Assembly: GCA_965655095.1 (NCBI GenBank)
Contig: OZ296651.1
Coordinates: 5,642,001-5,706,000, forward strand
Length of the DNA: 64,000 nt
From: Haplodiscus bocki
Lineage: Eukaryota
Reading direction: 5' to 3'
Below the pieces are notes generated by a model. That model had not been told where the DNA came from. It did not search any database and saw nothing but the letters and a program-made list of their open reading frames with translations. Numbering within the stretch: position 1 is the first letter of the stretch; every line of letters starts with the position of its first letter. Made by a program: the position numbers and the translations under genes. Of this stretch, positions 1 through 40,499 are shown piece after piece.

Positions 1-1019
1 GATGCATCGATGTGTTAGTTGCGTAAACTTTTCAGAAGTAAAGATACGGTCCATGTCGGTTAGGAATAATTATTGAGAACAGCTGGAAGATATACACAAA
101 CAATCGCGAACTCTCCCTCGAAACATTTAACAATAGCGACGCGACATAGTGAAGGTTTAAATGAACAGCAACAAAATGGAGTTTCACCTTTCAATTTACG
201 GAGAGACTGAAAAACAATCTCTATCACTAAAAAATGTTCTCCATCGAAAATGAGTGGGCTATCGTAGTAAGAGTTTGGCTGTGACACGTCCAGAAAAGTC
301 AAATTGAGTCACCTCCAACATCAGGACAAACCAAACAAGATCAAATCTGCCAATCCATACCATGTCCACGTAGCGGTCAAGCGAAAAAAAAACGAAACTC
401 CCACTACAGGACTAGAACCCACAGCCTGCTACATAGGTGGTTAACGCCTTTCCCACTAGCTCACACGGCTCAACTTGTTCATCAGGCCTTCAAAGCTCCA
501 CGCCAACAGGCATCAAGATACGGCCTAACTCATCTCAAAAGAAAACAATAAAAAGGACTTGATATATCGCCATATCGAAGTGTTCGTAGCCTAACTAATC
601 CGAAGTAAAAATACGGTCCATATCGGTTAGGAAAAACTAATGAGAAACGCCGGAAGATATACACGAATACTTGCGAACCCGACGCAAAAACTGCGCATAG
701 TTTCCGAAAATTCAGGAACCACGAAAGCACTCTCGGAGAAATATTTGACAAAAGCGACTCGACATAGTCAAATTTGTAATGACCAGCAACAAAACGAAGT
801 TTAACCTTTCAAATTAAGGAGGGACTGAAAAACAATGTTTATCATTAGAGAATGTTCTCCATCGAAAATGAGTGAACTATCGTAGTGTAAGAGTGTGGCT
901 GTGATATTTCTAATTAAAAATCAGTTTACAGTCTCCTACAACAGCAGAGGAAACCATAATAGAACAGATTCTACCAATCCACACCATGTTCACGTAGCTG
1001 CAAACCAAAAACGTAGGAA

Positions 1020-1092
1020 CAGCCACGACAGGACTCGAATCCGCAATCTTTTACTTACGAGGCAGACGGCTTCTCCGTTAGGCCACGCGGCT
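1020..1092 (-). pseudogene. tRNA-Arg-derived pseudogene, anticodon drifted to CGT
   Basis: AGCCGCG TG GCCT AACGGAGA AGCC G TCTGC CTCGTAA GTAAA AGATT GCGGA TTCGAGT CCTGT CGTGGCT G. The acceptor stem is perfect; the D, anticodon and T stems each have one mismatch. Confidence 0.8.
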
Positions 1093-1636
1093 CACGTTCA
1101 GCATGCTTTCAAAGCTTCAAAAAAAACACGCATCAAGATGAGGTTCAACTCATTGCTAAGGAAAAGGAAAACAAAGATTTGATATTTCGCGGCATCGATG
1201 TGCTCGTTGCGTAAACTTCAGAATTAAATATACGGTCCATGTCGGTTAGGAAAAACTAATGAGAAGAGCAGGAAGGTATACACAAACACTCGCGAACCAG
1301 AGGCAAAAAGTGCGCAAGGTTTCCAAAAAATCAGGGACCACAAAAGCACTGTCCCTCGAAACATTTAACAATAGCGACTCGCAATAGTCAAGGTTGAAAT
1401 GAACAGCAACAAAAGGGTGTTTCACCTTTCAAATTACGGAGGTACTGAAAAACAATTTCTATCATTAAAGAATGTTCTCCATCGAAAATGAGTGAACTAT
1501 CGTAGTAAGAGTTTGGCTGTGACACGTTCAAAAAAATCAAATTGAGTCAACTCCAACATCAGGACAAACCAAACAAGATCAAATTTGCCAATCTATACCA
1601 TGTCCACGTAGCTGCCAAGCGAAAAAAAAAACGAAA

Positions 1637-1709
1637 CTCCCACTACAGGACTCGAACCCACAGCCTGCTACATAGGCGGCTAACGCCTTTCCCACTAGCT
1701 CACACGGCT
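1637..1709 (-). pseudogene. Highly diverged tRNA-Arg(CCT) pseudogene, left-array variant with loop CGCCTAT (also at 2864, 4098, 5325, 6553, 7782, 9009, 10236)
   Basis: AGCCGTG TG AGCT AGTGGGAA AGGC G TTAGC CGCCTAT GTAGC AGGCT GTGGG TTCGAGT CCTGT AGTGGGA G. It is colinear with the consensus. Acceptor, D and anticodon stems are broken and U33 is lost, but the B box and downstream T-run are intact. Confidence 0.8.
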
Positions 1710-2249
1710 CAACTTGTTCATCAGGCCTTCAAAGTTCCATGCAAACACGCATCAAGATACGCCCTAACTCACCTCAAAGGAAAACAAAGACTTGATATTT
1801 CGCGGCATCGATGTGCTCGTTGCGTAAACTAATCAGAATTAAATATACGGTCCATGTCGGTTAGGAAAAACTAATGAGAAGAGCAGGAAGGTATACACAA
1901 ACACTCGCGAACCAGACGCAAAAAATGCGCAAGGTTTCCAAAAATTCAGGGACCACGAAAGCACTGTCCCTCGAAACATTTAACAATAGCGACTCGCAAT
2001 AGTCAAGGTTGAAATGAAGAGCAACAAAAGGGTGTTTCACCTTTCAAATTACGGAGGGACTGAAAAACAATGTATATCATTAAAGAATGTTCTCCATCGA
2101 AAATGAGTGAACTATCGTAGTAAGAGTTTGGCTGTGACACGTTCAAAAAAATCAAATTGAGTCACCTCCAACATCAGGACAAACCAAACAAGATCAAATT
2201 TGCCAATCTATACCATGTCCACGTAGCTGCCAAGCGAGAAAAAACGAAA

Positions 2250-2322
2250 CTCCCACTACAGGACTCGAACCAACAGCCTGCTACAGAGGTGGCTAACGCC
2301 TTTCCCATTAGCTCACACGGCT
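2250..2322 (-). pseudogene. Highly diverged tRNA-Arg(CCT) pseudogene, left-array variant with loop CACCTCT (also at 4711, 5940, 7167, 8394, 9621, 10847, 11462)
   Basis: Same broken cloverleaf as 1637-1709 with the diagnostic plus-strand motif ctacagaggtggctaacg. It alternates with the CGCCTAT variant in the dimeric repeat. Confidence 0.78.
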
Positions 2323-3480
2323 CAACTTGTTCCTCAGGACTTCAAAGTTCCATGCAAACACGCATCAAGATACGGCCTAACTCATCTCAAATGAAAACAA
2401 CAAGGATTTGATAAATCGCGACATCAAAGTGTTCGTTGCGTAACTAATCCGAAGTAAAAATACGGTCCATATCGGTTAGGAAAAACTAATGAGAAACGCC
2501 GGAAGATATACACAAATACTCGCGAACCCGACGCAAAAAGTGCGCATAGTTTCCGAAAATTCAGGAACCACGAAAGCACTGTCCCTCGAAACATTTAACA
2601 ATAGCGACTCGCAAAAGTCAAGGTTGAAAAGAACAGCAACAAAAGGGAGTTTCACCTTTCAATTTACGGAGGGACTGAAAAACAATGTCTATCTTTGAAG
2701 AAGGTTCTCCATCGAAAATGAGTGGGCTATCGTAGTAAGAGTTTGGTTGTGACGCGTCCAAAAAAAATCAAATTGAGTCAACTCCAACATCAGGACAAAC
2801 CAAACAAGATCAAATTTGCCAATCTATACCATGTCCACGTAGCTGCCAAGCGAAAAAAACAAACTCCCACTACAGGACTCGAACCCACAGCCTGCTACAT
2901 AGGCGGCTAACGCCTTTCCCACTAGCTCACACGGCTCAACTTGTTCATCAGGCCTTCAAAGTTCCATGCAAACACGCATCAAGATACGCCCTAACTCACC
3001 TCAAAGGAAAACAAAGACTTGATATTTCGCGGCATCGATGTGCTCGTTGCGTAAACTATTCAGAATTAAATATACGGTCCATGTCGGTTAGGAAAAACTA
3101 ATGAGAAACGCCGGAAGATATACACGAATACTCGCGAACCCGACGCAAAAAGTGCGCATAGTTTCCGAAAATTCAGGAACCACGAAAGCACTCTCGCAGA
3201 AATATTTGACAAAAGCGACTCGACATAGTCAAATTTGTAATGACCAGCAACAAAACGAAGTTTAACCTTTCAAATTAAGGAGGGACTGAAAAACAATGTT
3301 TATCATTAGAGAATGTTCTCCATCGAAAATGAGTGAACTATCGTAGTGTAAGAGTGTGGCTGTGATATTTCTAATTAAAAATCAGTTTACAGTCTCCTAC
3401 AACAGCAGAGGAAACCATAATAGAACAGATTCTACCAATCCACACCATGTTCACGTAGCTGCAAACCAAAAACGTAGGAA

Positions 3481-3553
3481 CAGCCACGACAGGACTCGAA
3501 TCCGCAATCTTTTACTTACGAGGCAGACGGCTTCTCCGTTAGGCCACGCGGCT
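3481..3553 (-). pseudogene. tRNA-Arg-derived pseudogene (CGT anticodon), duplicate of 1020-1092
   Basis: Same sequence as 1020-1092 at the +2461 higher-order repeat offset. Confidence 0.8.
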
Positions 3554-4319
3554 CACGTTCAGCATGCTTTCAAAGCTTCAAAAAAAACACGCATCAAGAT
3601 GAGGTTCAACTCATTGCTAAGGAAAAGGAAAACAAAGATTTGATATTTCGCGGCATCGATGTGCTCGTTGCGTAAACTTCAGAATTAAATATACGGTCCA
3701 TGTCGGTTAGGAAAAACTAATGAGAAGAGCAGGAAGGTATACACAAACACTCGCGAACCAGAGGCAAAAAGTGCGCAAGGTTTCCAAAAAATCAGGGACC
3801 ACAAAAGCACTGTCCCTCGAAACATTTAACAATAGCGACTCGCAATAGTCAAGGTTGAAATGAACAGCAACAAAAGGGTGTTTCACCTTTCAAATTACGG
3901 AGGTACTGAAAAACAATTTCTATCATTAAAGAATGTTCTCCATCGAAAATGAGTGAACTATCGTAGTAAGAGTTTGGCTGTGACACGTTCAAAAAAATCA
4001 AATTGAGTCAACTCCAACATCAGGACAAACCAAACAAGATCAAATTTGCCAATCTATACCATGTCCACGTAGCTGCCAAGCGAAAAAAAAAACGAAACTC
4101 CCACTACAGGACTCGAACCCACAGCCTGCTACATAGGCGGCTAACGCCTTTCCCACTAGCTCACACGGCTCAACTTGTTCATCAGGCCTTCAAAGTTCCA
4201 TGCAAACACGCATCAAGATACGCCCTAACTCACCTCAAAGGAAAACAAAGACTTGATATTTCGCGGCATCGATGTGCTCGTTGCGTAAACTAATCAGAAT
4301 TAAATATACGGTCCATGTC

Positions 4320-7300
4320 GGTTAGGAAAAACTAATGAGAAGAGCAGGAAGGTATACACAAACACTCGCGAACCAGACGCAAAAAGTGCGCAAGGTTTCC
4401 AAAAATTCAGGGACCACGAAAGCACTGTCCCTCGAAACATTTAACAATAGCGACTCGCAATAGTCAAGGTTGAAATGAAGAGCAACAAAAGGGTGTTTCA
4501 CCTTTCAAATTACGGAGGGACTGAAAAACAATGTATATCATTAAAGAATGTTCTCCATCGAAAATGAGTGAACTATCGTAGTAAGAGTTTGGCTGTGACA
4601 CGTTCAAAAAAATCAAATTGAGTCACCTCCAACATCAGGACAAACCAAACAAGATCAAATTTGCCAATCTATACCATGTCCACGTAGCTGCCAAGCGAGA
4701 AAAAACGAAACTCCCACTACAGGACTCGAACCCACAGCCTGCTACAGAGGTGGCTAACGCCTTTCCCATTAGCTCACACGGCTCAACTTGTTCCTCAGGA
4801 CTTCAAAGTTCCATGCAAACACGCATCAAGATACGGCCTAACTCATCTCAAATGAAAACAACAAGGATTTGATAAATCGCGACATCAAAGTGTTCGTTGC
4901 GTAACTAATCCGAAGTAAAAATACGGTCCATATCGGTTAGGAAAAACTAATGAGAAACGCCGGAAGATATACACAAATACTCGCGAACCCGACGCAAAAA
5001 GTGCGCATAGTTTCCGAAAATTCAGGAACCACGAAAGCACTGTCCCTCGAAACATTTAACAATAGCGACTCGCAAAAGTCAAGGTTGAAAAGAACAGCAA
5101 CAAAAGGGAGTTTCACCTTTCAATTTATGGAGGGACTGAAAAACAATGTCTATCTTTGAAGAAGGTTCTCCATCGAAAATGAGTGGGCTATCGTAGTAAG
5201 AGTTTGGCTGTGACGCGTCCAAAAAAAATCAAATTGAGTCAACTCCAACATCAGGACAAACCAAACAAGATCAAATTTGCCAATCTATACCATGTCCACG
5301 TAGCTGCCACGCGAAAAAAACAAACTCCCACTACAGGACTCGAACCCACAGCCTGCTACATAGGCGGCTAACGCCTTTCCCACTAGCTCACACGGCTCAA
5401 CTTGTTCATCAGGCCTTCAAAGTTCCATGCAAACACGCATCAAGATACGCCCTAACTCACCTCAAAGGAAAACAAAGACTTGATATTTCGCGGCATCGAT
5501 GTGCTCGTTGCGTAAACTATTCAGAATTAAATATACGGTCCATGTCGGTTAGGAAAAACTAATGAGAAGAGCAGGAAGGTATACACAAACACTCGCGAAC
5601 CAGACGCAAAAAGTGCGCAAGGTTTCCAAAAATTCAGGGACCACGAAAGCACTGTCCCTCGAAACATTTAACAATAGCGATTCGCAATAGTCAAGGTTGA
5701 AATGAACAGCAACAAAAGGGTGTTTCACCTTTCAAATTACGGAGGGACTGAAAAACAATGTATATCATTATAAGTTTGTTCTCCATCGAAAATGAGTGAA
5801 CTATCGTAGTAAGAGTTTGGCTGTGACACGTTCAAAAAAATCAAATTGAGTCACCTCCAACATCAGGACAAACCAAACAAGATCAAATTTGCCAATCTAT
5901 ACCATGTCCACGTAGCTGCCAAGCGAAAAAAAAACGAAACTCCCACTACAGGACTCGAACCCACAGCCTGCTACAGAGGTGGCTAACGCCTTTCCCATTA
6001 GCTCACACGGCTCAACTTGTTCCTCAGGACTTCAAAGTTCCATGCAAACACGCATCAAGATACGGCCTAACTCATCTCAAATGAAAACAACAAGGATTTG
6101 ATAAATCGCGACATCAAAGTGTTCGTTGCGTAACTAATCCGAAGTAAAAATACGGTCCATATCGGTTAGGAAAAACTAATGAGAAACGCCGGAAGATATA
6201 CACAAATACTCGCGAACCCGACGCAAAAAGTGCGCATAGTTTCCGAAAATTCAGGAACCACGAAAGCACTGTCCCTCGAAACATTTAACAATAGCGACTC
6301 GCAAAAGTCAAGGTTGAAAAGAACAGCAACAAAAGGGAGTTTCACCTTTCAATTTACGGAGGGACTGAAAAACAATGTCTATCTTTGAAGAAGGTTCTCC
6401 ATCGAAAATGAGTGGGCTATCGTATAAGAGTTTGGCTGTGACGCGTCCAAAAAAAATCAAATTGAGTCAACTCCAACATCAGGACAAACCAAACAAGATC
6501 AAATTTGCCAATCTATACCATGTCCACGTAGCTGCCAAGCGAAAAAAACAAACTCCCACTACAGGACTCGAACCCACAGCCTGCTACATAGGCGGCTAAC
6601 GCCTTTCCCACTAGCTCACACGGCTCAACTTGTTCATCAGGCCTTCAAAGTTCCATGCAAACACGCATCAAGATACGCCCTAACTCACCTCAAAGGAAAA
6701 CAAAGACTTGATATTTCGCGGCATCGATGTGCTCGTTGCGTAAACTATTCAGAATTAAATATACGGTCCATGTCGGTTAGGAAAAACTAATGAGAAGAGC
6801 AGGAAGGTATACACAAACACTCGCGAACCAGACGCAAAAAGTGCGCAAGGTTTCCAAAAATTCAGGGACCACGAAAGCACTGTCCCTCGAAACATTTAAC
6901 AATAGCGACTCGCAATAGTCAAGGTTGAAATGAACAGCAACAAAAGGGTGTTTCACCTTTCAAATTACGGAGGGACTGAAAAACAATGTATATCATTATA
7001 AGTTTGTTCTCCATCGAAAATGAGTGAACTATCGTAGTAAGAGTTTGGCTGTGACACGTTCAAAAAAATCAAATTGAGTCACCTCCAACATCAGGACAAA
7101 CCAAACAAGATCAAATTTGCCAATCTATACCATGTCCACGTAGCTGCCAAGCGAAAAAAAACGAAACTCCCACTACAGGACTGGAACCCACAGCCTGCTA
7201 CAGAGGTGGCTAACGCCTTTCCCATTAGCTCACACGGCTCAACTTGTTCCTCAGGACTTCAAAGTTCCATGCAAACACGCATCAAGATACGGCCTAACTC

Positions 7301-10300
7301 ATCTCAAATGAAAACAACAAGGATTTGATAAATCGCGACATCAAAATGTTCGTTGCGTAACTAATCCGAAGTAAAAATACGGTCCATATCGGTTAGGAAA
7401 AACTAATGAGAAACGCCGGAAGATATACACAAATACTCGCGAACCCGACGCAAAAAGTGCGCATAGTTTCCGAAAATTCAGGAACCACGAAAGCACTCTC
7501 CCTCGAAACATTTAACAATAGCGACTCGCAATAGTCAAGGTTGAAAAGAACAGCAACAAAAGGGAGTTTCACCTTTCAATTTACGGAGGGACTGAAAAAC
7601 AATGTCTATCTTTGAAGAATGTTCTCCATCGAAAATGAGTGGGCTATCGTAGTAAGAGTTTGGCTGTGACACGTCCAGAAAAGTCAAATTGAGTCACCTC
7701 CAACATCAGGACAAACCAAACAAGATCAAATCTGCCAATCCATACCATGTCCACGCAGCGGTCAAGCGAAAAAAAAACAAACTCCCACTACAGGACTCGA
7801 ACCCACAGCCTGCTACATAGGCGGCTAACGCCTTTCCCACTAGCTCACACGGCTCAACTTGTTCATCAGGCCTTCAAAGTTCCATGCAAACACGCATCAA
7901 GATACTCCCTAACTCACCTCAAAGGAAAACAAAGACTTGATATTTCGCAGCATCGATGTGCTCGTTGCGTAAACTTCAGAATTAAATATACGGTCCATGT
8001 CGGTTAGGAAAAACTAATGAGAAGAGCAGGAAGGTATACACAAACACTCGCGAACCAGACGCAAAAAGTGCGCAAGGTTTCCAAAAATTCAGGGACCACG
8101 AAAGCACTGTCCCTCGAAACATTTAACAATAGCGACTCGCAATAGTCAAGGTTGAAATGAACAGCAACAAAAGGGTGTTTCACCTTTCAAATTACGGAGG
8201 GACTGAAAAACAATGTATATCATTATAAGTTTGTTCTCCATCGAAAATGAGTGAACTATCGTAGTAAGAGTTTGGCTGTGACACGTTCAAAAAAATCAAA
8301 TTGAGTCACCTCCAACATCAGGACAAACCAAACAAGATCAAATTTGCCAATCTATACCATGTCCACGTAGCTGCCAGGCGAAAAAAAACGAAACTCCCAC
8401 TACAGGACTCGAACCCACAGCCTGCTACAGAGGTGGCTAACGCCTTTCCCATTAGCTCACACGGCTCAACTTGTTCCTCAGGACTTCAAAGTTCCATGCA
8501 AACACGCATCAAGATACGGCCTAACTCATCTCAAATGAAAACAACAAGGATTTGATAAATCGCGACATCAAAGTGTTCGTTGCGTAACTAATCCGAAGTA
8601 AAAATACGGTCCATATCGGTTAGGAAAAACTAATGAGAAATGCCGGAAGATATACACAAATACTCGCGAACCCGACGCAAAAAGTGCGCATAGTTTCCGA
8701 AAATTCAGGAACCACGAAAGCACTGTCCCTCGAAACATTTAACAATAGCGACTCGCAATAGTCAAGGTTGAAAAGAACAGCAACAAAAGGGAGTTTCACC
8801 TTTCAATTTACGGAGGGACTGAAAAACAATGTCTATCTTTGAAGAATGTTCTCCATCGAAAATGAGTGGGCTATCGTAGTAAGAGTTTGGCTGTGACACG
8901 TCCAGAAAAGTCAAATTGAGTCACCTCCAACATCAGGACAAACCAAACAAGATCAAATCTGCCAATCCATACCATGTCCACGCAGCGGTCAATCGAAAAA
9001 AAAACAAACTCCCACTACAGGACTCGAACCCACAGCCTGCTACATAGGCGGCTAACGCCTTTCCCACTAGCTCACACGGCTCAACTTGTTCATCAGGCCT
9101 TCAAAGTTCCATGCAAACACGCATCAAGATACTCCCTAACTCACCTCAAAGGAAAACAAAGACTTGATATTTCGCAGCATCGATGTGCTCGTTGCGTAAA
9201 CTTCAGAATTAAATATACGGTCCATGTCGGTTAGGAAAAACTAATGAGAAGAGCAGGAAGGTATACACAAACACTCGCGAACCAGACGCAAAAAGTGCGC
9301 AAGGTTTCCAAAAATTCAGGGACCACGAAAGCACTGTCCCTCGAAACATTTAACAATAGCGACTCGCAATAGTCAAGGTTGAAATGAACAGCAACAAAAG
9401 GGTGTTTCACCTTTCAAATTACGGAGGGACTGAAAAACAATGTATATCATTATAAGTTTGTTCTCCATCGAAAATGAGTGAACTATCGTAGTAAGAGTTT
9501 GGCTGTGACACGTTCAAAAAAATCAAATTGAGTCACCTCCAACATCAGGACAAACCAAACAAGATCAAATTTGCCAATCTATACCATGTCCACGTAGCTG
9601 CCAAGCGAAAAAAAACGAAACTCCCACTACAGGACTCGAACCCACAGCCTGCTACAGAGGTGGCTAACGCCTTTCCCATTAGCTCACACGGCTCAACTTG
9701 TTCCTCAGGACTTCAAAGTTCCATGCAAACACGCATCAAGATACGGCCTAACTCATCTCAAATGAAAACAACAAGGATTTGATAAATCGCGACATCAAAG
9801 TGTTCGTTGCGTAACTAATCCGAAGTAAAAATACGGTCCATATCGGTTAGGAAAAACTAATGAGAAATGCCGGAAGATATACACAAATACTCGCGAACCC
9901 GACGCAAAAAGTGCGCATAGTTTCCGAAAATTCAGGAACCACGAAAGCACTGTCCCTCGAAACATTTAACAATAGCGACTCGCAATAGTCAAGGTTGAAA
10001 AGAACAGCAACAAAAGGGAGTTTCACCTTTCAATTTACGGAGGGACTGAAAAACAATGTCTATCTTTGAAGAATGTTCTCCATCGAAAATGAGTGGGCTA
10101 TCGTAGTAAGAGTTTGGCTGTGACACGTCCAGAAAAGTCAAATTGAGTCACCTCCAACATCAGGACAAACCAAACAAGATCAAATCTGCCAATCCATACC
10201 ATGTCCACGCAGCGGTCAAGCGAAAAAAAAACAAACTCCCACTACAGGACTCGAACCCACAGCCTGCTACATAGGCGGCTAACGCCTTTCCCACTAGCTC

Positions 10301-11600
10301 ACACGGCTCAACTTGTTCATCAGGCCTTCAAAGTTCCATGCAAACACGCATCAAGATACTCCCTAACTCACCTCAAAGGAAAACAAAGACTTGATATTTC
10401 GCAGCATCGATGTGCTCGTTGCGTAAACTTCAGAATTAAATATACGGTCCATGTCGGTTAGGAAAAACTAATGAGAAGAGCAGGAAGGTATACACAAACA
10501 CTCGCGAACCAGACGCAAAAAGTGCGCAAGGTTTCCAAAAATTCAGGGACCACGAAAGCACTGTCCCTCGAAACATTTAACAATAGCGACTCGCAATAGT
10601 CAAGGTTGAAATGAACAGCAACAAAAGGGTGTTTCACCTTTCAAATTACGGAGGGACTGAAAAACAATGTATATCATTAAAGAATGTTCTCCATCGAAAA
10701 TGAGTGAACTATCGTAGTAAGAGTTTGGCTGTGACACGTTCAAAAAAATCAAATTGAGTCACCTCCAACATCAGGACAAACCAAACAAGATCAAATTTGC
10801 CAATCTATACCATGTCCACGTAGCAGCCAAGCGAAAAAAAACGAAACTCCCACTACAGGACTGGAACCCACAGCCTGCTACAGAGGTGGCTAACGCCTTT
10901 CCCATTAGCTCACACGGCTCAACTTGTTCCTCAGGACTTCAAAGTTCCATGCAAACACGCATCAAGATACGGCCTAACTCATCTCAAATGAAAACAACAA
11001 GGATTTGATAAATCGCGACATCAAAATGTTCGTTGCGTAACTAATCCGAAGTAAAAATACGGTCCATATCGGTTAGGAAAAACTAATGAGAAACGCCGGA
11101 AGATATACACAAATACTCGCGAACCCGACGCAAAAAGTGCGCATAGTTTCCGAAAATTCAGGAACCACGAAAGCACTCTCCCTCGAAACATTTAACAATA
11201 GCGACTCGCAATAGTCAAGGTTGAAAAGAACAGCAACAAAAGGGAGTTTCACCTTTCAATTTACGGAGGGACTGAAAAACAATGTCTATCTTTGAAGAAT
11301 GTTCTCCATCGAAAATGAGTGGGCTATCGTAGTAAGAGTTTGGCTGTGACACGTCCAGAAAAGTCAAATTGAGTCACCTCCAACATCACGACAAACCAAA
11401 CAAGATCAAATCTGCCAATCCATACCATGTCCACGCAGCGGTCAAGCGAAAAAAAAAGAAACTCCCACTACAGGTCTCGAACCCACAGCCTGCTACAGAG
11501 GTGGCTAACGCCTTTCCCATTAGCTCACACGGCTCAACTTGTTCCTCAGGCCTTCAAAGTTCCATGCAAACACGCATCAAGATACGCCCTAACTCATCTC
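4320..11600. repeat. Higher-order repeat: about six copies of a 2-unit, 1226-1229-bp block
   Basis: Two unit types alternate. Offsets: 4950/6179, 7074/8301/9528/10754 and 7747/8974/10201/11427. Confidence 0.92.
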
Positions 11601-12094: not shown

Positions 12095-12167
12095 CAGCCA
12101 CGACAGGACTCGAACCCGCAATCTTCTACTTAGGAGGCAGACGCCTTCTCCATTAGGCCACGCCGCT
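12095..12167 (-). tRNA. tRNA-Arg-CCT: tRNA-Arg(CCT), best-preserved copy (one G4:G69 acceptor-stem mismatch; may or may not be functional)
   Basis: Reverse complement folds as AGCGGCG TG GCCT AATGGAGA AGGC G TCTGC CTCCTAA GTAGA AGATT GCGGG TTCGAGT CCTGT CGTGGCT G. D, anticodon and T arms are fully paired (G:U allowed). U33, anticodon CCT, A20 and G73 fit Arg identity. A box TGGCCTAATGG and B box GGTTCGAGTCC are intact, with a T4 run about 9 nt downstream. Confidence 0.78.
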
Positions 12168-17165: not shown

Positions 17166-17199
17166 TGGTGGAGCAGTAAGTCATTTTCCTGAATTTTAA

Positions 17200-20297: not shown

Positions 20298-20423
20298 CAC
20301 GTTCGCTAGGCCTTCAACGCTCCACGCAAACATGCATCAAGATACGGCCTAACTCATGGCAAACGAAAATATTACCGAAGAACTTGATGTATCGCGACAT
20401 CGAAGTGATCGTTGCGTAAATAA

Positions 20424-21063: not shown

Positions 21064-21095
<32 letters not shown>

Positions 21096-21105
21096 ATACT
21101 ACTAC
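20424..21105 (+). mobile_element. 5'-truncated CR1/L2-type LINE (ORF2 3' end, 3'UTR, (TAC)n tail) with 7-bp target-site duplication TAAATAA
   Basis: The frame reads SKVFYFLKRNVPFGTVSSKKLL*QSLILSVLLYGSPVWVPSIAYFRKLEKFQMKVLNWI...NFFVRA...CCYFVKCYCSTCRK* (stop at 21004). The (TAC)n tail spans 21064-21105. TAAATAA occurs at 20417-20423 and 21106-21112; removing the insert and one copy restores the unit sequence gttgcgtaaataatcagag. Confidence 0.93.
21064..21105 (+). repeat. (TAC)n microsatellite forming the LINE 3' tail
   Basis: About 14 TAC units with one TAA interruption. Confidence 0.95.
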
Positions 21106-22150: not shown

Positions 22151-22223
22151 CAGCCACGACAGGACTCGACCCCGCATTCTTCTACTTAGGAGTCAGACGC
22201 CTTTACCATTCAGCCACGAGGCT
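22151..22223 (-). pseudogene. tRNA-Arg(CCT) pseudogene
   Basis: AGCCTCG TG GCTG AATGGTAA AGGC G TCTGA CTCCTAA GTAGA AGAAT GCGGG GTCGAGT CCTGT CGTGGCT G. It shares the D-arm and T54 lesions with 19601-19673. Confidence 0.78.
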
Positions 22224-30600: not shown

Positions 30601-33203
30601 TGCGAAATGTCACAGAAAAATTCAATTTTGAGTCTACTCTCATATCAGAAAAACCTGAGAAAAAACACCAGGATCTGCCGCCAATACACACCATCTCTAC
30701 GTAGCTACCGAACCAAAAAAAATAAGTCACGACACGACTCGAACCCCCAATCTTTTACATAGGAGTCAGACACCTTCTCCATTAGGCCATGCGCTCACGT
30801 TCGAGAGGTCTTCAAAGCTTCATGCAAACACGCATCAATATAAGGTTTAACTCATGGCAAATAAAAAGGATAAGAAGGACTTGATATATCGCAACATCGA
30901 AGACTTCGCTGCGTAACTAATCAGAAATTAATATACGGGCCATATCGGTTTGAACAAACTGAAGCGACGCGCCTGCAGGTACACAGAGTTACTCGCGAAC
31001 CGGAGGCAAAAAGTGAGCATACTTTCCACAAGATCAGGAACCAGGAAAGCACTCTGCCTCAAAACATTTTACACCGGCGACTCGACATAGTCAAACTTGA
31101 AGTGACCAGCAACAAAAAAAGCTGAGGCATTCAATTTATGGAAGGGCAGAAAAACAATATCTATCATTAGAGATTGTTCTCCATCGAAAATGAATGAACT
31201 AAAGTAGCGGGATAGTGTGGCTGCGACATGTCCCATCAAAATTCAATTTTGAGTCTACTCTCAGATCAGAAGAAACTGAGCAAAAGACCAGGATCTGCCA
31301 ATACACACCATGTCTACGTAGCGACCAAACCAAAAAAAAAATCAGCTACGACAGGACTCGAACCCCAAATCTTCTACTTAGGAGTCGGGCGCCTTCTCCA
31401 TTAGTCCACGATGCTCACGTTCGACAGGTCTTCAAAGCTCCATGCAAACACAAATCAAGATAAGGTTTAAATCATTGCTAATGAAAAGGATAGGAAGGAG
31501 TTGATAAATCGCGACATCGAAGTGTTCGCCGCGTAACTAATCAAAAGTACATATATGGGCTATATCGGTTAGGAGAAATTGAACCGATCGGCCAAAAGAT
31601 ACACACAAAGACTCGCAAACCCGAGGCAACAAGTGCGCATAGTTTCCAAAAATTCAGAAACCAGGTAAGCATTCTCCCTCAAAACATTTTACACCAGCGA
31701 CTCCACATACTCAAATTCGATATGACCAGCAAAAAAAGTTTAGGCTTTCAATTTACGGAGGGACAGAAAAACAATATCTATCATTAGAGATAGTTCTCCA
31801 TCGAAAAAGAGTGAACTATCGTGGTGGGATAGTGTGGCTGCGACAGGTCCCATTAAAATTCAATCTTGAGTCTACTCTGACATCAGAAGATACAGAAAAA
31901 AAACAAGAATCTGCCAATACACACCATGTCTACGTAGCTACCAAATAAAAAAAAATCAAAACAGCCACAACAGAGCTCGAACCCCCAATCTTCTACTTAG
32001 GAGTCGGACGCCTTCTCCATTAGTCCACGACGCTCACGTTCGACAGGTCTTCAAAGCTCCATGCAAACACAAATCAAGATAAGGTTTAACTCATTGCTAA
32101 TGAAAAGGATAGGAAGGACTTGATATATCGCGACATCGAAGTGTTCGTCGCGTAACTAATCAAAAGTAAATATATGGGCTATATCGGTTAGGACAAACTG
32201 TACAGACCGGTCTGAAAATATACACAAAAACTAGCGATCCCGAGGCAAAAAGTGCGCATAGTTTCTAAAAACTCAGGAACCAGGTAAGCACTCTTCCTCG
32301 AAACATTTTACACCAGCGAGTCTACATACTCAAATTCGATAAGACCGGCAACAAAAAAATGGGCTTTCAATTTACGCAGGGACAGAAAAACAATTCCCAT
32401 CATTAGAGATTGTTCTCCATCGAAAAAGAGTGAACTATCGTAGCGGGATAGTGTGGCTGCGACATGTCCCACAAAAATTCAATTTTGAGTCTACTCTCAT
32501 ATCAGAAAAACCTGAGAAAAAACGCCAGGATCTGCCGCCAATACACACCATCTCTACGTAGCTACCGAACCAAAAAAAAATCAGCCACGACACTACTCGA
32601 ACCCACAATCTTTTACATAGGAGTCAGACGCCTTCTCCATTAGGCCACGACGCTCACGTTCGCCAGGTCTTCAGAGCTCAATGCAAACACGCATCAAGAT
32701 AAGGTTTAACTCATGGCAAATAATAAAAAGGATAAGAAGGACTTGATATATCGCAACATCGAAGTCTTCGCTGCGTAACCAATCAGAAATTAATATACGG
32801 GCCATATCGGTTTGAACAAACTGAAGCGACGCGCCTGCAGGTATACAGAGTTACTCGCGAACCGGAGGCAAAAAGTGAGCATATTTTCCACGAGATCAGG
32901 AACCAGGAAAGCACTCTGCCTCAAAACATTTTAAACCGGCGACTCGACATAGTCAAACTTGAAGTGACCAGCAACAAAAAAAGCTGAGGCATTCAATTTA
33001 TGGAAGGGCAGAAAAACAATATCTATCATTAGAGATTGCTCTACATCGAAAATGAGTGAACTATCGTAGCGGGATAGTGTGGCTGCGACATGTCCCATCA
33101 AAATTCAATTTTGAGTCTACTCTCAGATCAGAAGAAACTGAGCAAAAGACCAGTATCTGCCAATACACACCATGTCTACGTAGCGACCAAACCAAAAGAA
33201 AAT

Positions 33204-33276: not shown

Positions 33277-33559
33277 CACGCTTCCTGGCAGGCCTTGAAA
33301 GCTCCATGAAAACAAGCATCAAAATAAAGTTCAACTCATGTCAAATGAAAAGATCAAGAAAGACTTGATATTTCGCCACATCGAAGAGTTCGTTGCGTAA
33401 ACTAATCAGAAGTTAATATACGGGCTAAAACTATTACGACAAACTGAACGGACCGGCCTGAAGATATACACAAAGACTCGTGAATCCGAGGCCAAAAGTT
33501 CGCATAGTTTCCCAAATTTTAGAAACCAGGAAAGGTCTCTCCCTCAAAACATTTTACAC

Positions 33560-36150
33560 CAGCGAGTCTAAATGCTCAAAGTGGAATTGACCAGCAACAA
33601 AAAAAGTTAAGGCTTTCAATTTACGGAGGGACAGAAAAACAATATCAATCATTAGAGATTGTTTTCCATCGAAAATGAGTGAACTATCGTAGTGGGATAG
33701 TGTGGCTGCGGCATGTCTCATCAAAATTCAATTTTGAGTCTACTCCCACATCAGAAGAAACTGAGAAAAAGACCAGGATCTGCCAATACACACCATGTCT
33801 ACGTAGCTACCTAACCAGAAAAAAATCAGCCACGACACCACTCAAACCCCCAATCTTCAACTTAGGAGTCATAGGCCTTCTCCATAAAGCCAGGCGGCTG
33901 ACGTTCTTTGCCAGGCCTTCGAAGCTCCATGAAAACACGCATCAAGATAAAGGTCAACTATTGTCAAATGAAAAGATCAACAGAGACTTGATATATCGCC
34001 ACATCAAAGAGCTCGTTGCGTTTCAACATCAGAAGTAAATATACGGGCGATATCGGTTAGGGCAAACTAAATAGGCCGGCCTGAAGATATACACATATAC
34101 TAGCGAACTCCAGGCAAAAAGCGCGCATAGTTTCCAAAAAATCAGGAACCAGGTAAGCATTCTGCCTGAAAACATTTCACACCAGCGACTCGACATAGTC
34201 AAATTTGAAGTGACCAGCAACAAAAAAAAGCTTAGCCATTCAATTTACGGAAAGACAAAAACAATATCTATCATTAAAAATATCATTAAAAATATCTTCA
34301 TTGAAAATGAGTGAACTATCGTAGTGGGAAAAGTGTGACTGCGACATGTCCCATAAAAATTCAATTTTGAGCCTACTCTCACATCAGAAGAAACTGAGAA
34401 AAAGACCAGGATCTGCCAATACACACCATGTCTACGTAGCCACCAAACCAGAAAAAAATCAGCCACGACACGACTCGAACCCGCAATCTTCTACTTAGGA
34501 GTCATACGCCTTCTCCATGAAGCCAGGGGACTCAAGTTCTTTGGCAGGCCTTCAAAGCTCAATGCAAACACGCATCAAGATAAGGTTCAGCCCATGTCAA
34601 AAGAAAAGAAAAACAAAGACTTGATATATCGCCACATCGAAGAGTTCGTTGCGTAAACTAATCAGAAGTCAATATACGGGCTAAAACTATAACGACAAAC
34701 TAAACAGAACGGCCTGAAGATATACACAAAGACTCGTGAATCCGAGGCAAAAAGTGCGCATAGTTTCCCAAATTTCAGAAACCAGGAAAGCACTCTCCCT
34801 CAAAACATTTTACACCAGCGAGTCTAAATGCTCAAAGTGGAATTGACCAGCAACAAAAAAAAGTTTAGGCTTTCAATTTACGGAGGGACAGAAAAACAAT
34901 ATCAATCATTAGAGATTGTTTTCCATCGAAAATGAGTGAACTATCGTAGTGGGATAGTGTGGCTGCGGCATGTCTCATCAAAATTCAATTTTGAGTCTAC
35001 TCCCACATCAGAAGAAACTGAGAAAAAGACCAGGATCTGCCAATACACACCATGTCTACGTAGCTACCTAACCAGAAAAAAATCAGCCACGACACCACTC
35101 AAACCCCCAATCTTCAACTTAGGAGTCATAGGCCTTCTCCATAAAGCCAGGCGGCTGACGTTCTTTGCCAGGCCTTCGAAGCTCCATGAAAACACGCATC
35201 AAGATAAAGGTCAACTATTGTCAAATGAAAAGATCAACAGAGACTTGATATATCGCCACATCAAAGAGCTCGTTGCGTTTCAACATCAGAAGTAAATATA
35301 CGGGCGATATCGGTTAGGGCAAACTAAATAGGCCGGCCTGAAGATATACACATATACTAGCGAACTCCAGGCAAAAAGCGCGCATAGTTTCCAAAAAATC
35401 AGGAACCAGGTAAGCATTCTGCCTGAAAACATTTCACACCAGCGACTCGACATAGTCAAATTTGAAGTGACCAGCAACAAAAAAAAGCTTAGCCATTCAA
35501 TTTACGGAAAGACAAAAACAATATCTATCATTAAAAATATCATTAAAAATATCTTCATTGAAAATGAGTGAACTATCGTAGTGGGAAAAGTGTGACTGCG
35601 ACATGTCCCATAAAAATTCAATTTTGAGCCTACTCTCACATCAGAAGAAACTGAGAAAAAGACCAGGATCTGCCAATACACACCATGTCTACGTAGCCAC
35701 CAAACCAGAAAAAAATCAGCCACGACACGACTCGAACCCGCAATCTTCTACTTAGGAGTCATACGCCTTCTCCATGAAGCCAGGGGACTCAAGTTCTTTG
35801 GCAGGCCTTCAAAGCTCAATGCAAACACGCATCAAGATAAGGTTCAGCCCATGTCAAAAGAAAAGAAAAACAAAGACTTGATATATCGCCACATCGAAGA
35901 GTTCGTTGCGTAAACTAATCAGAAGTCAATATACGGGCTAAAACTATAACGACAAACTAAACAGAACGGCCTGAAGATATACACAAAGACTCGTGAATCC
36001 GAGGCAAAAAGTGCGCATAGTTTCCCAAATTTCAGAAACCAGGAAAGCACTCTCCCTCAAAACATTTTACACCAGCGAGTCTAAATGCTCAAAGTGGAAT
36101 TGACCAGCAACAAAAAAAAGTTTAGGCTTTCAATTTACGGAGGGACTGAA
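33560..36150. repeat. Higher-order repeat: two copies of a 2-unit, 1257-bp block, with a related third copy at ~36,790-37,780
   Basis: Identical ORFs at 33679/34936, 34029/35286 and 34245/35502, plus a shared 12-bp duplication tatcattaaaaa at ~34269 and ~35526. Boundaries are approximate. Confidence 0.88.
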
Positions 36151-38206
36151 AAACAATATCAATCATTAGAGATTGTTTTCTATCGAAAATGAGTGAACTA
36201 TCGTATTGGGATACTGTGGCTGCCATATGTCCCATCAAAATTCAATTTTGAGTCTACTCTCACATCAAAAGAAACTGAGAAAAAGACCAGGATCTGCCAA
36301 AACACACCATGTCTATGTAGCCACCAAACCAGAAAAAAATCAGCCACGACACGACTCGAATCTGCAATCTTTTACATAGGACTCAGACACCTTCTCCATT
36401 AGGCCATGCCCTCACGTTCGAGATGTCTTCAAAGCTTCATGCAAACACGCATCAAGATAAGGTTTAACTCATGACAAACAAAAAGGATAAGAAGGACTTG
36501 ATATATCGCAACATCGAAGTGTTCGCTGCGTAACTAATCAGAAATCAATATACGGGCCATATCGATTTGAACAAACTGAAGCGACGCGCCTGCAGGTGTA
36601 CAGAGTTACTCGCGAACCGGAAGCAAAAAGTGAGCATACTTTTCACGAGATCAGGAACCAGGAAAGCACTCTCCCTCAAAACATTTTACACCGGCGACTC
36701 GACATAGTCAAATTTGAAGTGACCAGCACCAAAAAAATGCTTAGGCATTCAATTTACGGAAAGACAAAAACAATATCTATCATTAAAGATTGTTCTTCAT
36801 TCAAAATGAGTGAACTATCGTAGTGGGATAGTGTGGCTGCGGCATGTCCCATCAAAATTCAATTTTGAGTCTACTCCCACATCAGAAGAAACTGAGAAAA
36901 AGACCAGGATCTGCCAATACACACCATGTCTACGTAGCTACCAAACCAGAAAAAAATCAGCCACGACACGACTCAAACCCGCAATCTTCAACTTAGGAGT
37001 CATAGGCCTTCTCCATAAAGCCAGGCGACTGACGTTCTTTGCCAGGCCTTCGAAGCTCCATGAAAACACGCATCAAGATAAAGTTCAACTAATGTCAAAT
37101 GAAAAGATCAACAGAGGCTTGACATATCGCCACATCAAAGAGTTCGTTGCGTTTCAACATCAGAAGTAAATATACGGGCGATATCGGTTAGGGCAAACTA
37201 AATAGGCCGGCCTGAAGATATACACATATACTCGCGAACTCCAGGCAAAAAGCGCGCATAGTTTCCAAAAAATCAGGAACCAGGTAAGCATTCTGCCTCA
37301 AAACATTTCACACCAGCGAGTCGACATAGTCAAATTTGAAGTGACCAGCAACAAAAAAAAGTTTAGGCAATCAATTTACGGAAAGACAAAAACAATAACT
37401 ATCATTAAAGATTGTTCTTCATTGAAAATGAGTGAACTATCGTAGTGGGAAAAGTGTGGCTGCGACATGTCCCATAAAAATTCAATTTTGGGCCTACTCT
37501 CACATCAGAAGAAACTGAGAAAAAGACCAGGATCTGCCAATACACACCATGTCTATGTAGCCACCAAACCAGAAAAAAATCAGCCACGACACGACTCGAA
37601 CCCGCAATCTTCTACTTAGGAGTCATACGCCTTCTCCATGAAGCCAGGGGACTCAAGTTCTTTGGCAGGCCTTCAAAGCTCCATGCAAGCACGCATCAAG
37701 ATAAGGTTCAGCCCATGTCAAAAGAAAAGAAAAACAAAGACTTGATATATCGCCACATCGAAGAGTTCGTTGCGTAAATTAATCAGAAGTTAATAGACGC
37801 GCTATGCCGGTTAGGAAAAACTAAACAGACAGGCCAGCAGATATACACAATAACTCGCGAACCCGAGGCAAAAAGTGCCAATAGTTTCCAAAGTTCAGTA
37901 ACCAGGAAAGCATTCTCCCTCGAAAAAATTTAAATCAGCGCTTCGACATACTCAAATTTCAATTGATCAGCAACAAAATGAGGTTTAAACTTTTAATTTA
38001 GGGAGGGACAGAAAAACAATGTCTAACATTAAAGAATGTTCTTGATCGAAGAAGGGTGAACTATCGTGATGTGATAGATTGGCTGTGACATGTCCAATGA
38101 AAAATCACTTTAGAAACTCCTCCAACAGCTGAAGAAACTGGAAACAAGACCAGATTGTGCCAAGCCACAACATGTCTACGTAGCTGCCAAACCATAAAAA
38201 ACAGAA

Positions 38207-38279
38207 CAGCAATGTCAGGACTCGAACCCGCAATCTTGTCCTTAGGAGGCAGACGCCTTCTCAATTATGCCACGCTGCT
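38207..38279 (-). pseudogene. tRNA-Arg(CCT) pseudogene, last clearly recognisable copy
   Basis: Retains TCTGC CTCCTAA and GCGGG TTCGAGT CC; the acceptor and anticodon 3' strands have diverged. Confidence 0.75.
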
Positions 38280-39510
38280 CACGTTGTTCGGCAGGCCTTC
38301 AACACTCGAAGCAAACACGCATCAAGATAAGGTTTCACTGATGGCAATTAAAAGATTAACAAAGACTTGATATTTTGCAACCTCGAAAGGCTCATTGCGT
38401 GAGCTAGTCAAGAAAAAATATACGAGCTATTTCTCTTACGACGAACTCAGAAGACGGCCTGCAGAAATACACAAATGTTGGCGAGCCCGTTAGAGGAAAA
38501 GTTCGCGTATTATCCGAAAGTCCAGGAACCCGGAAAAAACTTTCAAAACTTCTCATACCAGTGCGCCGACAGAATTATATTCGAAATGACCAGCAACTGA
38601 CTGATAACAAAAATTACAACGTACGAAGAGATAGAGAAACAATGGCTCCCATTAGGGAATGTTCCTGATCCAAGAAGAATGGACCAATATAATGGCATAC
38701 TGCGGTGCTAACTTGTCCAATAAAAAACTTTGAGCCTCCTCCAACAGCTCTTCCCAAAAACTGAGAGCAAGAACAGTTTCTGCTAATTCTACGAAAAAAA
38801 CATCTATGACGCAACTCCAACCAGCAATCTTCTACTAATGAGGCATACGCCTTATCTATTACACCACGCAGCTCAAGTTTTTCTGCAGGCCCTAATACAC
38901 ACAGACTCACAGTGAGATATTGTTTAACTCATGTGAGCCGGAAAAAGGTGTGACTCGACAAATCATGACATCGAAGTCATCGTTGCGTAAACCAATGAAG
39001 AGTAATCATACGCGCTAAAACTGCTAGGGCAAAGTCGGAAGAACGGCCTGTAGACACAAACACTGGTGAGCCCCAAATAGCAAACAGATTGCAAAGGATC
39101 AGGAACATTGAAAGTGCATTCCATCAAAACTTTTTTACAACAGACCCTCGACACAGTAATATTTCACATGACGAGCAACTGAATGAAGTCAAAACATTCA
39201 AAGTACGGAGAGATTAAAAAACATTGGCTCTCAATAAGCAATGTTCATGATCCAAAGTGAATGAACTATGGTAGTGGGATGGTGCGGTGTTAAAACTTCC
39301 AATAAATTTCGAGTACGAGTTTCCTCCAACAAATGAAGAGGCTGAAAACAAGAACGGATTCTGCCTATTCACACCACAGTCAAAACAATGCCAAACCAAA
39401 CAAAATCCAAAACTTCCACGATGCGACTCGAACTCACAATCTTGTACTAAGCAGGTGTACGCCGTATCTATTAGGCCACACGCCTCAAGTTATCCTGCAG
39501 GTTTTAAAAG

Positions 39511-39538
39511 CCCCCCCCCCACACACACACACACACAC
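39511..39538. repeat. C10(AC)9 microsatellite within the last array unit
   Basis: Read directly: cccccccccc acacacacac acacacac. Confidence 0.9.
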
Positions 39539-40499
39539 TCAACGAGATACGGTTTACTCATGCAGGCCAAAAAATTGTAGGACTTGACATATCAAAACAT
39601 CGATGTCATCGTTGGGTAAACTAATCAAGATTAAATATACGGGCTAAAGCTCCCACTACAAACTCGGATGACAAGCCAGTAGAGACAAAAATCTTGGCGA
39701 ACCCGTTTGAGTGAATAGTTTGCGTAGTTTCCAAAGCTGCAGGAACCGGGAAATAACTTTACGGCAAGATTTTCTGCAAGATTGCGTTTGCCTTATCAAC
39801 CTCAGCGCTGATAGTTCAAAAGTACACATTTAAATTTAAAACAGGATATGACTAACCTTGTAACAGCTACAGTGTGTATAGCAATAACAGCAACAGAAAG
39901 GGTAAAAATGAGCAATAAATAGAGGACAACAAGCAAATTACGCAACATTTCGACAGAGTCAAAAAGCCCATGTACCATAATGCAATGCCGTTCAGGTCAA
40001 ATCGGGTTGGGCTCTAGCAATGAGGTAGACCGACCGCGCAACCATTCCGGCCTTTCTTCTGGAGCCAGGTAGAAAAAAGAGCAGACTTTTTGGTTTATCG
40101 TGTTCAAAAGTTTGTTGGTTTCTCAAATAAAAGACAGATCAGTGTTGGAAAAGTTTTGCGAAAGTTTGAACACCTTGAAGCATGAAATCAGCAAACGATC
40201 CGAGAATCATGCTTGAAAAGTGAGAAAAAAAATATTTATTGAAACTTGAAATTCCTTGTCATCTATACATGTAATTTAATACCATTTAAATTTTATAATT
40301 CCTTCAACTATCTGTTCTGCACTAACACCTAATTGTGTTGGAAAAACAAAAAACCTACAAGCCTGATCCACCCAAATCTAAAAATTACCATCCAATTCCT
40401 TCTTCCATCCTCGTCTGTAACGGAGCCCCCAGCAGCCGTAGAGTTCTTCCAGGCCAGATTCAGAATGTGGAAAAGATAGGAATCGAAAATGGAACTGCT

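What the first reader, a model, noticed from the sequence alone, without database searches (positions are those of the whole stretch)
1..39772. A >=34-kb macrosatellite built from a single tRNA-Arg(CCT) Pol III cassette, almost all copies broken
Seen: ~56 head-to-tail units, each with one minus-strand tRNA-Arg(CCT)-derived module, an adjacent T-run terminator and ~540 bp of spacer. No copy I folded is a perfect cloverleaf. Established: AGG-decoding tRNA-Arg(CCT) is normally a low-copy isoacceptor. Clustered tDNA and B boxes recruit TFIIIC and act as chromatin barriers or condensin loading sites, as at fission-yeast centromeres. Entamoeba keeps its tRNA genes in tandem arrays, but those genes are intact. 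Inference: translational demand cannot explain amplifying non-folding copies. The array is either a neutral tRNA-born satellite or a structural TFIIIC/Pol III landing array, possibly pericentromeric or subtelomeric. I cannot tell from the sequence whether it has been described before.
Basis: partly seen in the sequence, partly recalled or inferred. Interest (0 to 1): 0.85.

Follow-up and report, generated by a model that had tools for sequence, protein, structure and literature searches.

The report
Decayed tandem array of tRNA-Arg genes
About 40 kb of this animal chromosome is 56 head-to-tail copies of one arginine tRNA gene plus its spacer; nearly all copies are dead and drifting like ordinary satellite DNA, a kind of array already reported in cnidarians.

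Summary
Window 1 to about 39646 holds 56 minus-strand tRNA-Arg(CCT)-like modules at a period of about 615 bp. Each is followed within 8 nt by a T run. Two transposon insertions interrupt the array, which runs off the window's left edge.

No copy is a perfect cloverleaf. Six copies pass ARAGORN and Rfam, two come close, and 48 score nothing.

The tRNA part shows no selection:
- Pairing is no better than in shuffles, and there are almost no compensatory changes.
- The tRNA diverges as fast as the spacer (25% against 23%).
- The B box is no better kept than many spacer stretches. Only 23 of 56 units have a canonical B box and 11 of 56 an A box.

The array turns over by unequal exchange. It has dimer, 4-unit and 9-unit duplications at 96-100% identity. 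A second assembly of the same locus differs by whole units.

The neutral tRNA-born satellite reading is therefore supported. The TFIIIC/Pol III landing-array reading is not supported by the sequence, though only ChIP could exclude it.

Tandem tRNA arrays with spacers of several hundred nt or more are published for Hydractinia and Nematostella. This scan has already noted tRNA-Ile, Met and Trp arrays elsewhere in this genome. I score it a new member of a known kind, of low to moderate interest.

The parts
1..39646 (-). Whole tandem array: 56 units of about 615 bp, each a 73-nt tRNA-Arg(CCT)-like module, a T run and about 540 bp of spacer. It is cut by the window's left edge.
398..11534 (-). Youngest, homogenised block: A/B dimer higher-order repeat (99% within a type, 91% between types). 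Its modules are the least tRNA-like, with 7-8 mispairs of 21. A 2461-bp T-A-B-A segment is duplicated (units at 1020 and 3481, 96%).
12095..12167 (-). Best copy: tRNA-Arg(CCT), 54.5 bits, one G4.G69 mispair and 4 G.U pairs. It is the only copy whose minimum-energy fold is a cloverleaf.
1020..1092 (-). Copy passing tRNA models at 34.7 bits, with the anticodon changed to CGT and 3 mispairs. A twin lies at 3481-3553.
3481..3553 (-). Twin of the 1020 copy (anticodon CGT, 34.7 bits).
19601..19673 (-). Copy passing tRNA models at 48.2 bits, with the anticodon changed to CTT and 3 mispairs.
20225..20297 (-). tRNA-Arg(CCT) copy, 43.1 bits, 2 mispairs.
22151..22223 (-). tRNA-Arg(CCT) copy, 46.5 bits, 3 mispairs.
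14264..18845 (-). 4.6-kb insertion of a degraded retroelement inside one unit. Its largest ORF (15302-16333, minus strand) carries a reverse-transcriptase domain. I take it for a non-LTR element because no long terminal repeats were found.
20424..21105 (.). 0.68-kb insertion of a dispersed repeat inside one unit, ending in a (TAC)n microsatellite.
24631..32654 (-). Middle-right block with a 5544-bp (9-unit) segmental duplication. Units at 25180 and 30724 are 100% identical.
33277..37653 (-). Block with a 1257-bp dimer duplication. Units at 34460 and 35717 are 100% identical.
38280..39646 (-). Decayed right edge: the last two units are 64-70% identical to the rest, followed by a 115-bp remnant.

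Best explanation
This is a tRNA-gene-derived satellite. One tRNA-Arg(CCT) gene, with its Pol III terminator and about 540 bp of flank, was amplified head to tail. The array has since been maintained, expanded and contracted by unequal crossing-over and segmental duplication. The tRNA part drifts at the same rate as the spacer, so amplification is a property of the DNA array and not a response to demand for the tRNA. At most a handful of copies, with 12095 the best candidate, could still yield a usable tRNA.

Shown here: the anatomy, the decay, the lack of structural constraint, the higher-order duplications and the unit-number polymorphism. Inferred: the neutrality of the array as a whole, and unequal exchange as the driving mechanism.
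For: Anatomy:
- There are 56 modules at a period of about 615 bp.

Decay:
- None of 56 is a perfect cloverleaf, and the commonest count is 7 mispairs of 21.
- 48 of 56 are invisible to the Rfam tRNA model even at E up to 10.
- Only the best copy folds as a cloverleaf, and no variant is more stable than its shuffles.

No structural selection:
- 68.9% of cells pair, against 70.1% in shuffles.
- Only 2 pairs show a change on both sides, against 6.0 expected.

No sequence selection:
- Over 300 non-redundant unit pairs, tRNA divergence is 25.0% and spacer divergence 23.1%.
- For most units, distance from the consensus is the same in tRNA and spacer.
- The B box ranks 124th of 662 windows, and several spacer blocks are better conserved.

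Turnover:
- Dimer, 4-unit and 9-unit duplications stand at 96-100% identity.
- A second assembly of the locus (ENA contig, 99.2% identical) has two extra units at one place and one fewer at another. The window's unit at 12095 is the recombinant product of two units of that contig.
- Two transposon insertions are tolerated.

Precedent:
- Hydractinia has tandem tRNA arrays with similar spacers for all 20 amino acids, and such arrays are also seen in Nematostella (PMC11067881).
- Nematostella has more than 17000 tDNAs, 89% of them clustered (PMC2888827).
Against: - Copy 12095 is closer to the consensus in its tRNA (2 of 73) than in its spacer (15%; P = 6e-4, about 0.03 after correction for 53 units). 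The best copies are mutually more alike in the tRNA than in the spacer. Those copies were picked for being tRNA-like, which biases this comparison.
- All 56 units keep a T run right after the module. However, T runs are common on that strand, at 16.5 per kb.
- CpG observed/expected is about 1, so there is no mark of long-term germline methylation such as silenced repeats often show.
- No RNA or chromatin data could be consulted.
- I could not see whether the genome has other intact tRNA-Arg(CCT) genes.
Confidence: 0.8

Rival explanations
1. Working tRNA gene cluster under birth-and-death evolution. The locus is the organism's source, or a main source, of tRNA-Arg(CCT). A few copies are kept functional by selection, and the rest are by-products of array turnover.
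For: Six copies pass ARAGORN and Rfam. Copy 12095 scores 54.5 bits, folds as a cloverleaf, and its tRNA is nearer the consensus than its spacer (P = 6e-4). The majority consensus of the modules has a complete 7-bp acceptor stem and D stem, so the founder was very probably a real gene.
Against: Even the best copy has a G.G mispair in the acceptor stem and four G.U pairs. Three of the six passing copies have lost the CCT anticodon, to CGT or CTT. In the other assembly, the copy in 12095's upstream context differs from it at 3 of 73 positions and reads CTT. No compensatory changes are seen. The apparent constraint is partly an artefact of choosing tRNA-like copies.
Confidence: 0.12
2. Structural Pol III/TFIIIC array. 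The repeated B boxes and terminators recruit TFIIIC, with or without Pol III, and act as a chromatin barrier, a condensin loading site or a centromere-flanking element.
For: 16 of 20 A/B-type units in the left part of the array (398-13977) keep GGTTCGAGTCC or GGTTCGAGACC, and all units keep a T run. tDNA clusters are reported to act as boundaries in other organisms; a human tRNA repeat at 1q23.3 is proposed as a boundary element in PMC4041453. The fission-yeast centromere case rests on my own knowledge.
Against: Only 23 of 56 units have a canonical B box and 11 of 56 an A box. B-box columns are no better conserved than many spacer windows. With 18 changes in 73 positions, an untouched 11-nt block is expected about 5% of the time, and the longest untouched run (15 nt) is about what chance gives. 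Earlier notes of this scan, which I did not check, name other candidate centromere satellites 39-56 Mb away on the same piece.
Confidence: 0.05
3. Tandemly amplified tRNA-derived SINE or other mobile element, and not a tRNA gene array.
For: The unit has a tRNA-like head followed by a longer non-tRNA body, as SINEs have. Transposons do land in and near the array.
Against: A T run of 4-10 follows the module directly. It would stop Pol III before the 'body', so the unit cannot be transcribed as a SINE. There are no copies in the 24 kb of flank. Read-contig depth over shared unit segments is only about 5-17 times that of unit-specific segments, which fits a family confined to arrays of this size. 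No poly(A) or LINE-like tail and no target-site duplications were seen.
Confidence: 0.02
4. Assembly artefact: a collapsed or inflated repeat.
For: Long tandem repeats are often misassembled. The two assemblies differ in unit number.
Against: Unit-specific variants are confirmed by short-read contigs from two samples. An independently assembled contig carries them at 99.2% identity over 13.3 kb, including both insertions.
Confidence: 0.01

Closest known systems
Tandem arrays of tRNA genes in the cnidarians Hydractinia and Nematostella (Schnitzler et al. 2024, PMC11067881; Bermudez-Santana et al. 2010, PMC2888827)
   Same: Evenly spaced head-to-tail units, each with one tRNA gene and a spacer of several hundred nt that is similar from unit to unit, in tens to hundreds of copies. 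They occur in a genome that also arrays other small-RNA genes; this scan's own unchecked notes report 7SL and U14 arrays here.
   Different: [quoted passage not shown] Here 48 of 56 modules are no longer recognisable as tRNA, unit families differ by up to about 25-35%, and the youngest block is the most damaged. The paper found no such arrays in other cnidarian genomes. This organism is probably a reef coral according to the scan's notes, which I did not verify.
Entamoeba tRNA gene arrays (Tawari et al. 2008, as cited in PMC11067881 and PMC2888827)
   Same: tRNA genes organised as long tandem arrays.
   Different: Here there is one isoacceptor per unit and most copies are dead.
Silenced clustered tDNAs of Arabidopsis (the Ser/Tyr/Tyr cluster on chromosome 1 in PMC12308677; clustered tDNAs in Hummel et al. 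2020, PMC7544208)
   Same: Tandemly repeated tRNA gene units that exceed translational need. They are reported as silent in most tissues, which is a plausible model for the state of this array.
   Different: The plant copies are mostly intact genes silenced epigenetically in heterochromatin. Here the copies are mutationally dead, and CpG observed/expected of about 1 gives no sign of methylation-driven decay.
[quoted passage not shown]
   Same: A copy-number-variable tandem repeat carrying tRNA genes, proposed to act as a boundary.
   Different: The human unit is 7.3 kb and GC-rich, and binds CTCF. Here the unit is 0.6 kb with 41-43% GC, and nothing in the sequence points to a boundary role.
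Classical satellite DNA with higher-order repeats
   Same: Tens of kb of head-to-tail units, homogenised blocks, higher-order periods (2, 4 and 9 units), decayed edges, transposon insertions and unit-number polymorphism.
   Different: The monomer's origin is known (a Pol III gene), and the family seems confined to one or a few arrays instead of making up a large share of the genome.

Membership tests
Tandem tRNA gene array (Hydractinia/Nematostella type) | Head-to-tail, evenly spaced units, each containing a tRNA gene | tested here: met
   56 modules on one strand, spaced 611-633 bp apart in nearly all cases.
Tandem tRNA gene array (Hydractinia/Nematostella type) | Spacers of several hundred nt that are similar between units | tested here: met
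   Spacers of about 540 bp align over their full length. Unit identity is 64-100%.
Tandem tRNA gene array (Hydractinia/Nematostella type) | Copies are intact, nearly identical tRNA genes | tested here: not met
   6 of 56 reach the Rfam gathering score and 0 of 56 are mispair-free. The array is best described as a decayed derivative of such an array.
Tandem tRNA gene array (Hydractinia/Nematostella type) | Transcription by Pol III | not testable with these tools
   No RNA runs were found for this organism.
Satellite DNA | Long head-to-tail array with homogenised blocks and higher-order repeats | tested here: met
   K-mer periods of 615, 1227, 2461 and 5544 bp. Blocks at 96-100% identity.
Satellite DNA | No selective constraint on the monomer's former gene | tested here: met
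   No covariation. tRNA divergence of 25.0% against 23.1% for the spacer.
Satellite DNA | Unit-number variation between haplotypes or individuals | tested here: met
   The ENA contig has 2 more units at one site and 1 fewer at another, and a different dimer order. The window's unit 12095 is a crossover product. The two assemblies may derive from the same sample.
TFIIIC-bound tDNA/ETC barrier or centromere-flanking tDNA cluster | Intact B boxes kept by selection | tested here: not met
   23 of 56 units have a canonical B box. Its conservation ranks 124th of 662 windows.
TFIIIC-bound tDNA/ETC barrier or centromere-flanking tDNA cluster | TFIIIC, condensin or CENP-A occupancy, and a position next to a centromere | not testable with these tools
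   No chromatin data are available. The position on the chromosome cannot be seen from the window.
tRNA-derived SINE | tRNA head transcribed together with a body and a LINE-like or A-rich tail; dispersed copies with target-site duplications | tested here: not met
   A terminator T run follows the module directly in 56 of 56 units. No dispersed copy lies in the flank. Copy depth is low.

The most novel reading that the evidence does not exclude
The array is not inert. Its B-box and terminator cassettes would be bound by TFIIIC and/or Pol III and organise chromatin. Alternatively, the few model-passing copies with switched anticodons (CGT at 1020 and 3481, CTT at 19601) on an arginine-type body would be expressed as chimeric tRNAs or tRNA-like small RNAs. 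None of my tests excludes occupancy or expression. They show only that no sequence constraint is visible.
Probability: 0.06. Interest if true: 0.6.

Novelty: new member of a known kind. Interest (0 to 1): 0.27.

Why it matters
The array gives a clear, datable example of a Pol III gene turning into satellite DNA. The founder was a plausible tRNA-Arg(CCT) gene. The oldest units keep recognisable tRNAs, while the block amplified most recently carries the most damaged module. This shows that amplification is driven by array mechanics and not by tRNA demand.

If the organism is a reef coral, as this scan's notes suggest, the finding extends tRNA arrays beyond Hydractinia and Nematostella. The Hydractinia genome paper reported finding none in other cnidarians. 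For annotation, such loci inflate tRNA and pseudogene counts and should be masked as satellite.

Tried and rejected
- TRF did not report the array because its period limit is 500. I used k-mer spacing and blastn instead.
- Two metagenome scans found nothing. One used a 36-nt tRNA pattern and the other a 30-nt conserved spacer block, so I have no relatives from other samples.
- Both sequencing-run searches found only DNA-like runs of one study and no RNA, so expression could not be tested.
- Pfam on 15 ORFs of the flank and inserts gave only the RT domain. The flank is non-coding and did not reveal the organism.
- The RT homologue search returned unnamed ENA proteins, so it gave no taxon. The atlas search gave only generic RT clusters.
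- An identical 73-nt tRNA in two units with diverged upstream spacers first looked like purifying selection. Alignment showed that the window unit is simply the crossover product of those two units in the other assembly, so I dropped that argument.
- The intact B box in the young block is within chance, about P = 0.05 for one lineage, so I did not count it as constraint.
- I could not walk the ENA contig beyond the window's left edge, because no gene is called there.
Full report
**Observation**

ARAGORN and Rfam each call only six tRNAs in the window, all on the minus strand between 1020 and 22223. TRF reports no long-period array because its period limit is 500.

K-mer spacing shows strong peaks at 615, 1227, 2461 and 5544 bp. 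A blastn search with the best module (12095-12167) finds 56 minus-strand copies from 401 to 39479, nearly all 611-633 bp apart. Aligned, every copy is a 73-nt tRNA-like module followed by a T run and a conserved spacer start.

Two gaps in the period are insertions inside units. One is 4.6 kb (14264-18845) and carries a reverse-transcriptase ORF. The other is 0.68 kb (20424-21105). Homology to the unit stops at about 39646 and is absent from the remaining 24 kb. The window begins inside the array.

**State of the tRNA modules**

With the standard cloverleaf laid on the 56 aligned modules, none is free of mispairs. The best copy, 12095, has one (G4.G69) plus four G.U pairs. One copy has 2 mispairs, four have 3, and the commonest count is 7 of 21.

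Under the Rfam tRNA model, six copies reach the gathering score (54.5, 48.2, 46.5, 43.1, 34.7 and 34.7 bits). Two score 28.2 and 25. The other 48 give no hit even at E up to 10.

The triplet at the anticodon position is CCT in 48 copies. Among the six passing copies it has become CGT (1020 and 3481) or CTT (19601).

By minimum-energy folding only 12095 forms a cloverleaf. None of five representative variants is more stable than its shuffles, with z from -0.44 to +1.37. So the damaged variants have not acquired another stable fold.

The majority consensus of the modules has a complete acceptor stem and D stem. This points to a genuine tRNA gene as founder. Its D-arm, anticodon loop and T-arm resemble animal tRNA-Arg(CCT) as I recall it; that comparison rests on my own knowledge and was not tested.

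**Is anything under selection?**

1. *Structure.* 68.9% of pair cells are standard pairs, against 70.1% after shuffling partners. Only 2 pairs show a two-sided change, against 6.0 expected. Pairing is higher than in slid registers only because the modules descend from a tRNA.
2. *Sequence by column.* In a non-redundant set of 25 units, the tRNA columns have mean pairwise identity 0.75 and the spacer 0.68. 35 of 600 spacer windows of the same length do as well, and the best window lies upstream of the gene. The B-box window ranks 124th of 662. Spacer blocks such as 11921-11950 and about 12251-12290 are better kept.
3. *Sequence by unit pair.* Over 300 non-redundant unit pairs, tRNA divergence is 25.0% and spacer divergence 23.1%.
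4. *Sequence by unit.* Distance to the consensus is the same in tRNA and spacer for nearly all units. Copy 12095 is the exception (2 of 73 against 15%; P = 6e-4, about 0.03 after correction). In the left block the module has changed somewhat faster than its spacer (25% against 16%).
5. *Promoter elements.* A canonical B box (GGTTCGANNCC) survives in 23 of 56 units and an A box in 11 of 56. All 56 keep a run of 4 or more T within 8 nt, but such runs occur 16.5 times per kb on this T-rich strand. The young block keeps its B box. With 18 changes in 73 positions, an untouched 11-nt block is expected about one time in twenty, so this is not evidence of constraint.

**Dynamics**

The unit identity matrix shows these blocks:

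| Region | Pattern | Identity |
|---|---|---|
| 398-11534 | A/B dimer block | 99% within a type, 91% between types |
| 1020 and 3481 | Duplicated 4-unit segment | 96% |
| 19-25 kb | Older, diverse middle that holds most of the recognisable tRNAs | 74-87% |
| 25180 and 30724 | 9-unit (5544-bp) duplication | 100% |
| 34460 and 35717 | Dimer duplication | 100% |
| Last two units | Decayed edge | 64-70% |

The RT protein led to an ENA contig of 168.5 kb (ERZ26859043 ctg84655). It is the same locus at 99.2% identity over 13.3 kb and includes both insertions. That contig has two extra units next to 12095, one unit fewer at 13287/13908, and a different order of A/B dimers.

The window's unit 12095 is a recombinant of two units of that contig. 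Its upstream spacer matches one unit at 98-100%. Its tRNA and downstream spacer match the other at 100%. The junction lies at the 5' edge of the tRNA. This is direct evidence of unequal exchange. It also explains an apparent case of an identical tRNA in diverged units that I first took for selection. The contig's name style suggests a metagenome-type assembly, possibly of the same sample, so it may be the other haplotype and not another individual.

Short-read contigs from two samples confirm unit-specific segments. Segments shared between units have about 5-17 times the depth of unit-specific ones, so the family is not hugely abundant elsewhere. CpG observed/expected is about 1 throughout.

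**Interpretation**

The simplest account is a tRNA gene array that has become satellite DNA. Array mechanics amplify whichever unit happens to be there, and recently that has been the most damaged one. The tRNA part drifts along with the spacer.

A minority reading is that a few copies still supply tRNA-Arg(CCT). Copy 12095 is the only serious candidate, and even it carries an acceptor-stem mispair.

A SINE origin is unlikely, because the terminator follows the module directly and no dispersed copies were seen.

**Comparison with what is known**

[quoted passage not shown] Its genome paper found tRNA arrays in Nematostella but in no other cnidarian genome (PMC11067881).
- Nematostella has more than 17000 tDNAs, 89% of them clustered (PMC2888827).
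- Other tRNA repeats are the silenced clusters of Arabidopsis (PMC7544208, PMC12308677) and the human 1q23.3 repeat (PMC4041453).
- This scan's earlier notes report arrays of tRNA-Ile, tRNA-Met, tRNA-Trp, 7SL and U14 in the same genome. A follow-up on the Ile array reached the same verdict as mine. Those notes are unchecked here.

**Limits**

- The organism is called a probable reef coral only in those notes. My sole hint is a 5% word share in a coral-reef metagenome run, so I did not verify the taxon.
- Offsets printed by the findings index place other findings up to 112 Mb beyond the window on the same piece. Where the window sits relative to a centromere or a chromosome end is unknown.

**Verdict**

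The feature is real and correctly described. It is best read as a decayed tRNA-Arg gene array behaving as satellite DNA. It is a new member of a known kind.

Noticed in passing
window 14264-18845 (ORF 15302-16333, minus strand): A degraded retroelement is inserted in one satellite unit. Its RT ORF is broken into several pieces and it holds a 49-bp x 2.9 internal tandem repeat at 15174-15316. Relatives at 71-83% identity sit on several long ENA contigs.
   Followed up: partly
window 20424-21105: A 0.68-kb insert lies inside a unit and ends in a (TAC)14.7 microsatellite at 21064-21107. Read-contig depth is about 17-50 times that of unit-specific segments, so it is a dispersed repeat. Its 145-aa ORF has no Pfam match.
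   Followed up: partly
L002 9128-11600 against window 11465-12735: Two-unit (about 1.24 kb) presence/absence difference between the two assemblies. The crossover junction lies at the 5' edge of the tRNA module. There is also a one-unit difference at window 13287/13908, and the A/B dimers stand in a different order.
   Followed up: yes
window 1020-1092, 3481-3553, 19601-19673; L002 11001-11073: Copies that still pass tRNA models but have a changed anticodon on an arginine-type body (CGT or CTT). If expressed and charged they would be chimeric tRNAs; nothing here shows that they are.
   Followed up: no
window 11921-11950 (-) and about 12251-12290 (-), and the same positions in other units: Two spacer blocks are conserved across unit families as well as or better than the tRNA module. 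One lies about 90-115 nt upstream of the tRNA. No Rfam match and no explanation.
   Followed up: partly
window 1-39646: Strong strand asymmetry: AT skew of +0.24 to +0.29 on the plus strand outside the two insertions. Runs of 4 or more T occur 16.5 per kb on the tRNA strand against 4.3 per kb on the other. CpG observed/expected is about 1.
   Followed up: no
window 39647-64000: The flank beside the array has no recognisable gene, tRNA, Pfam domain or long repeat. GC drops from about 0.42 to about 0.38 at the array edge.
   Followed up: partly
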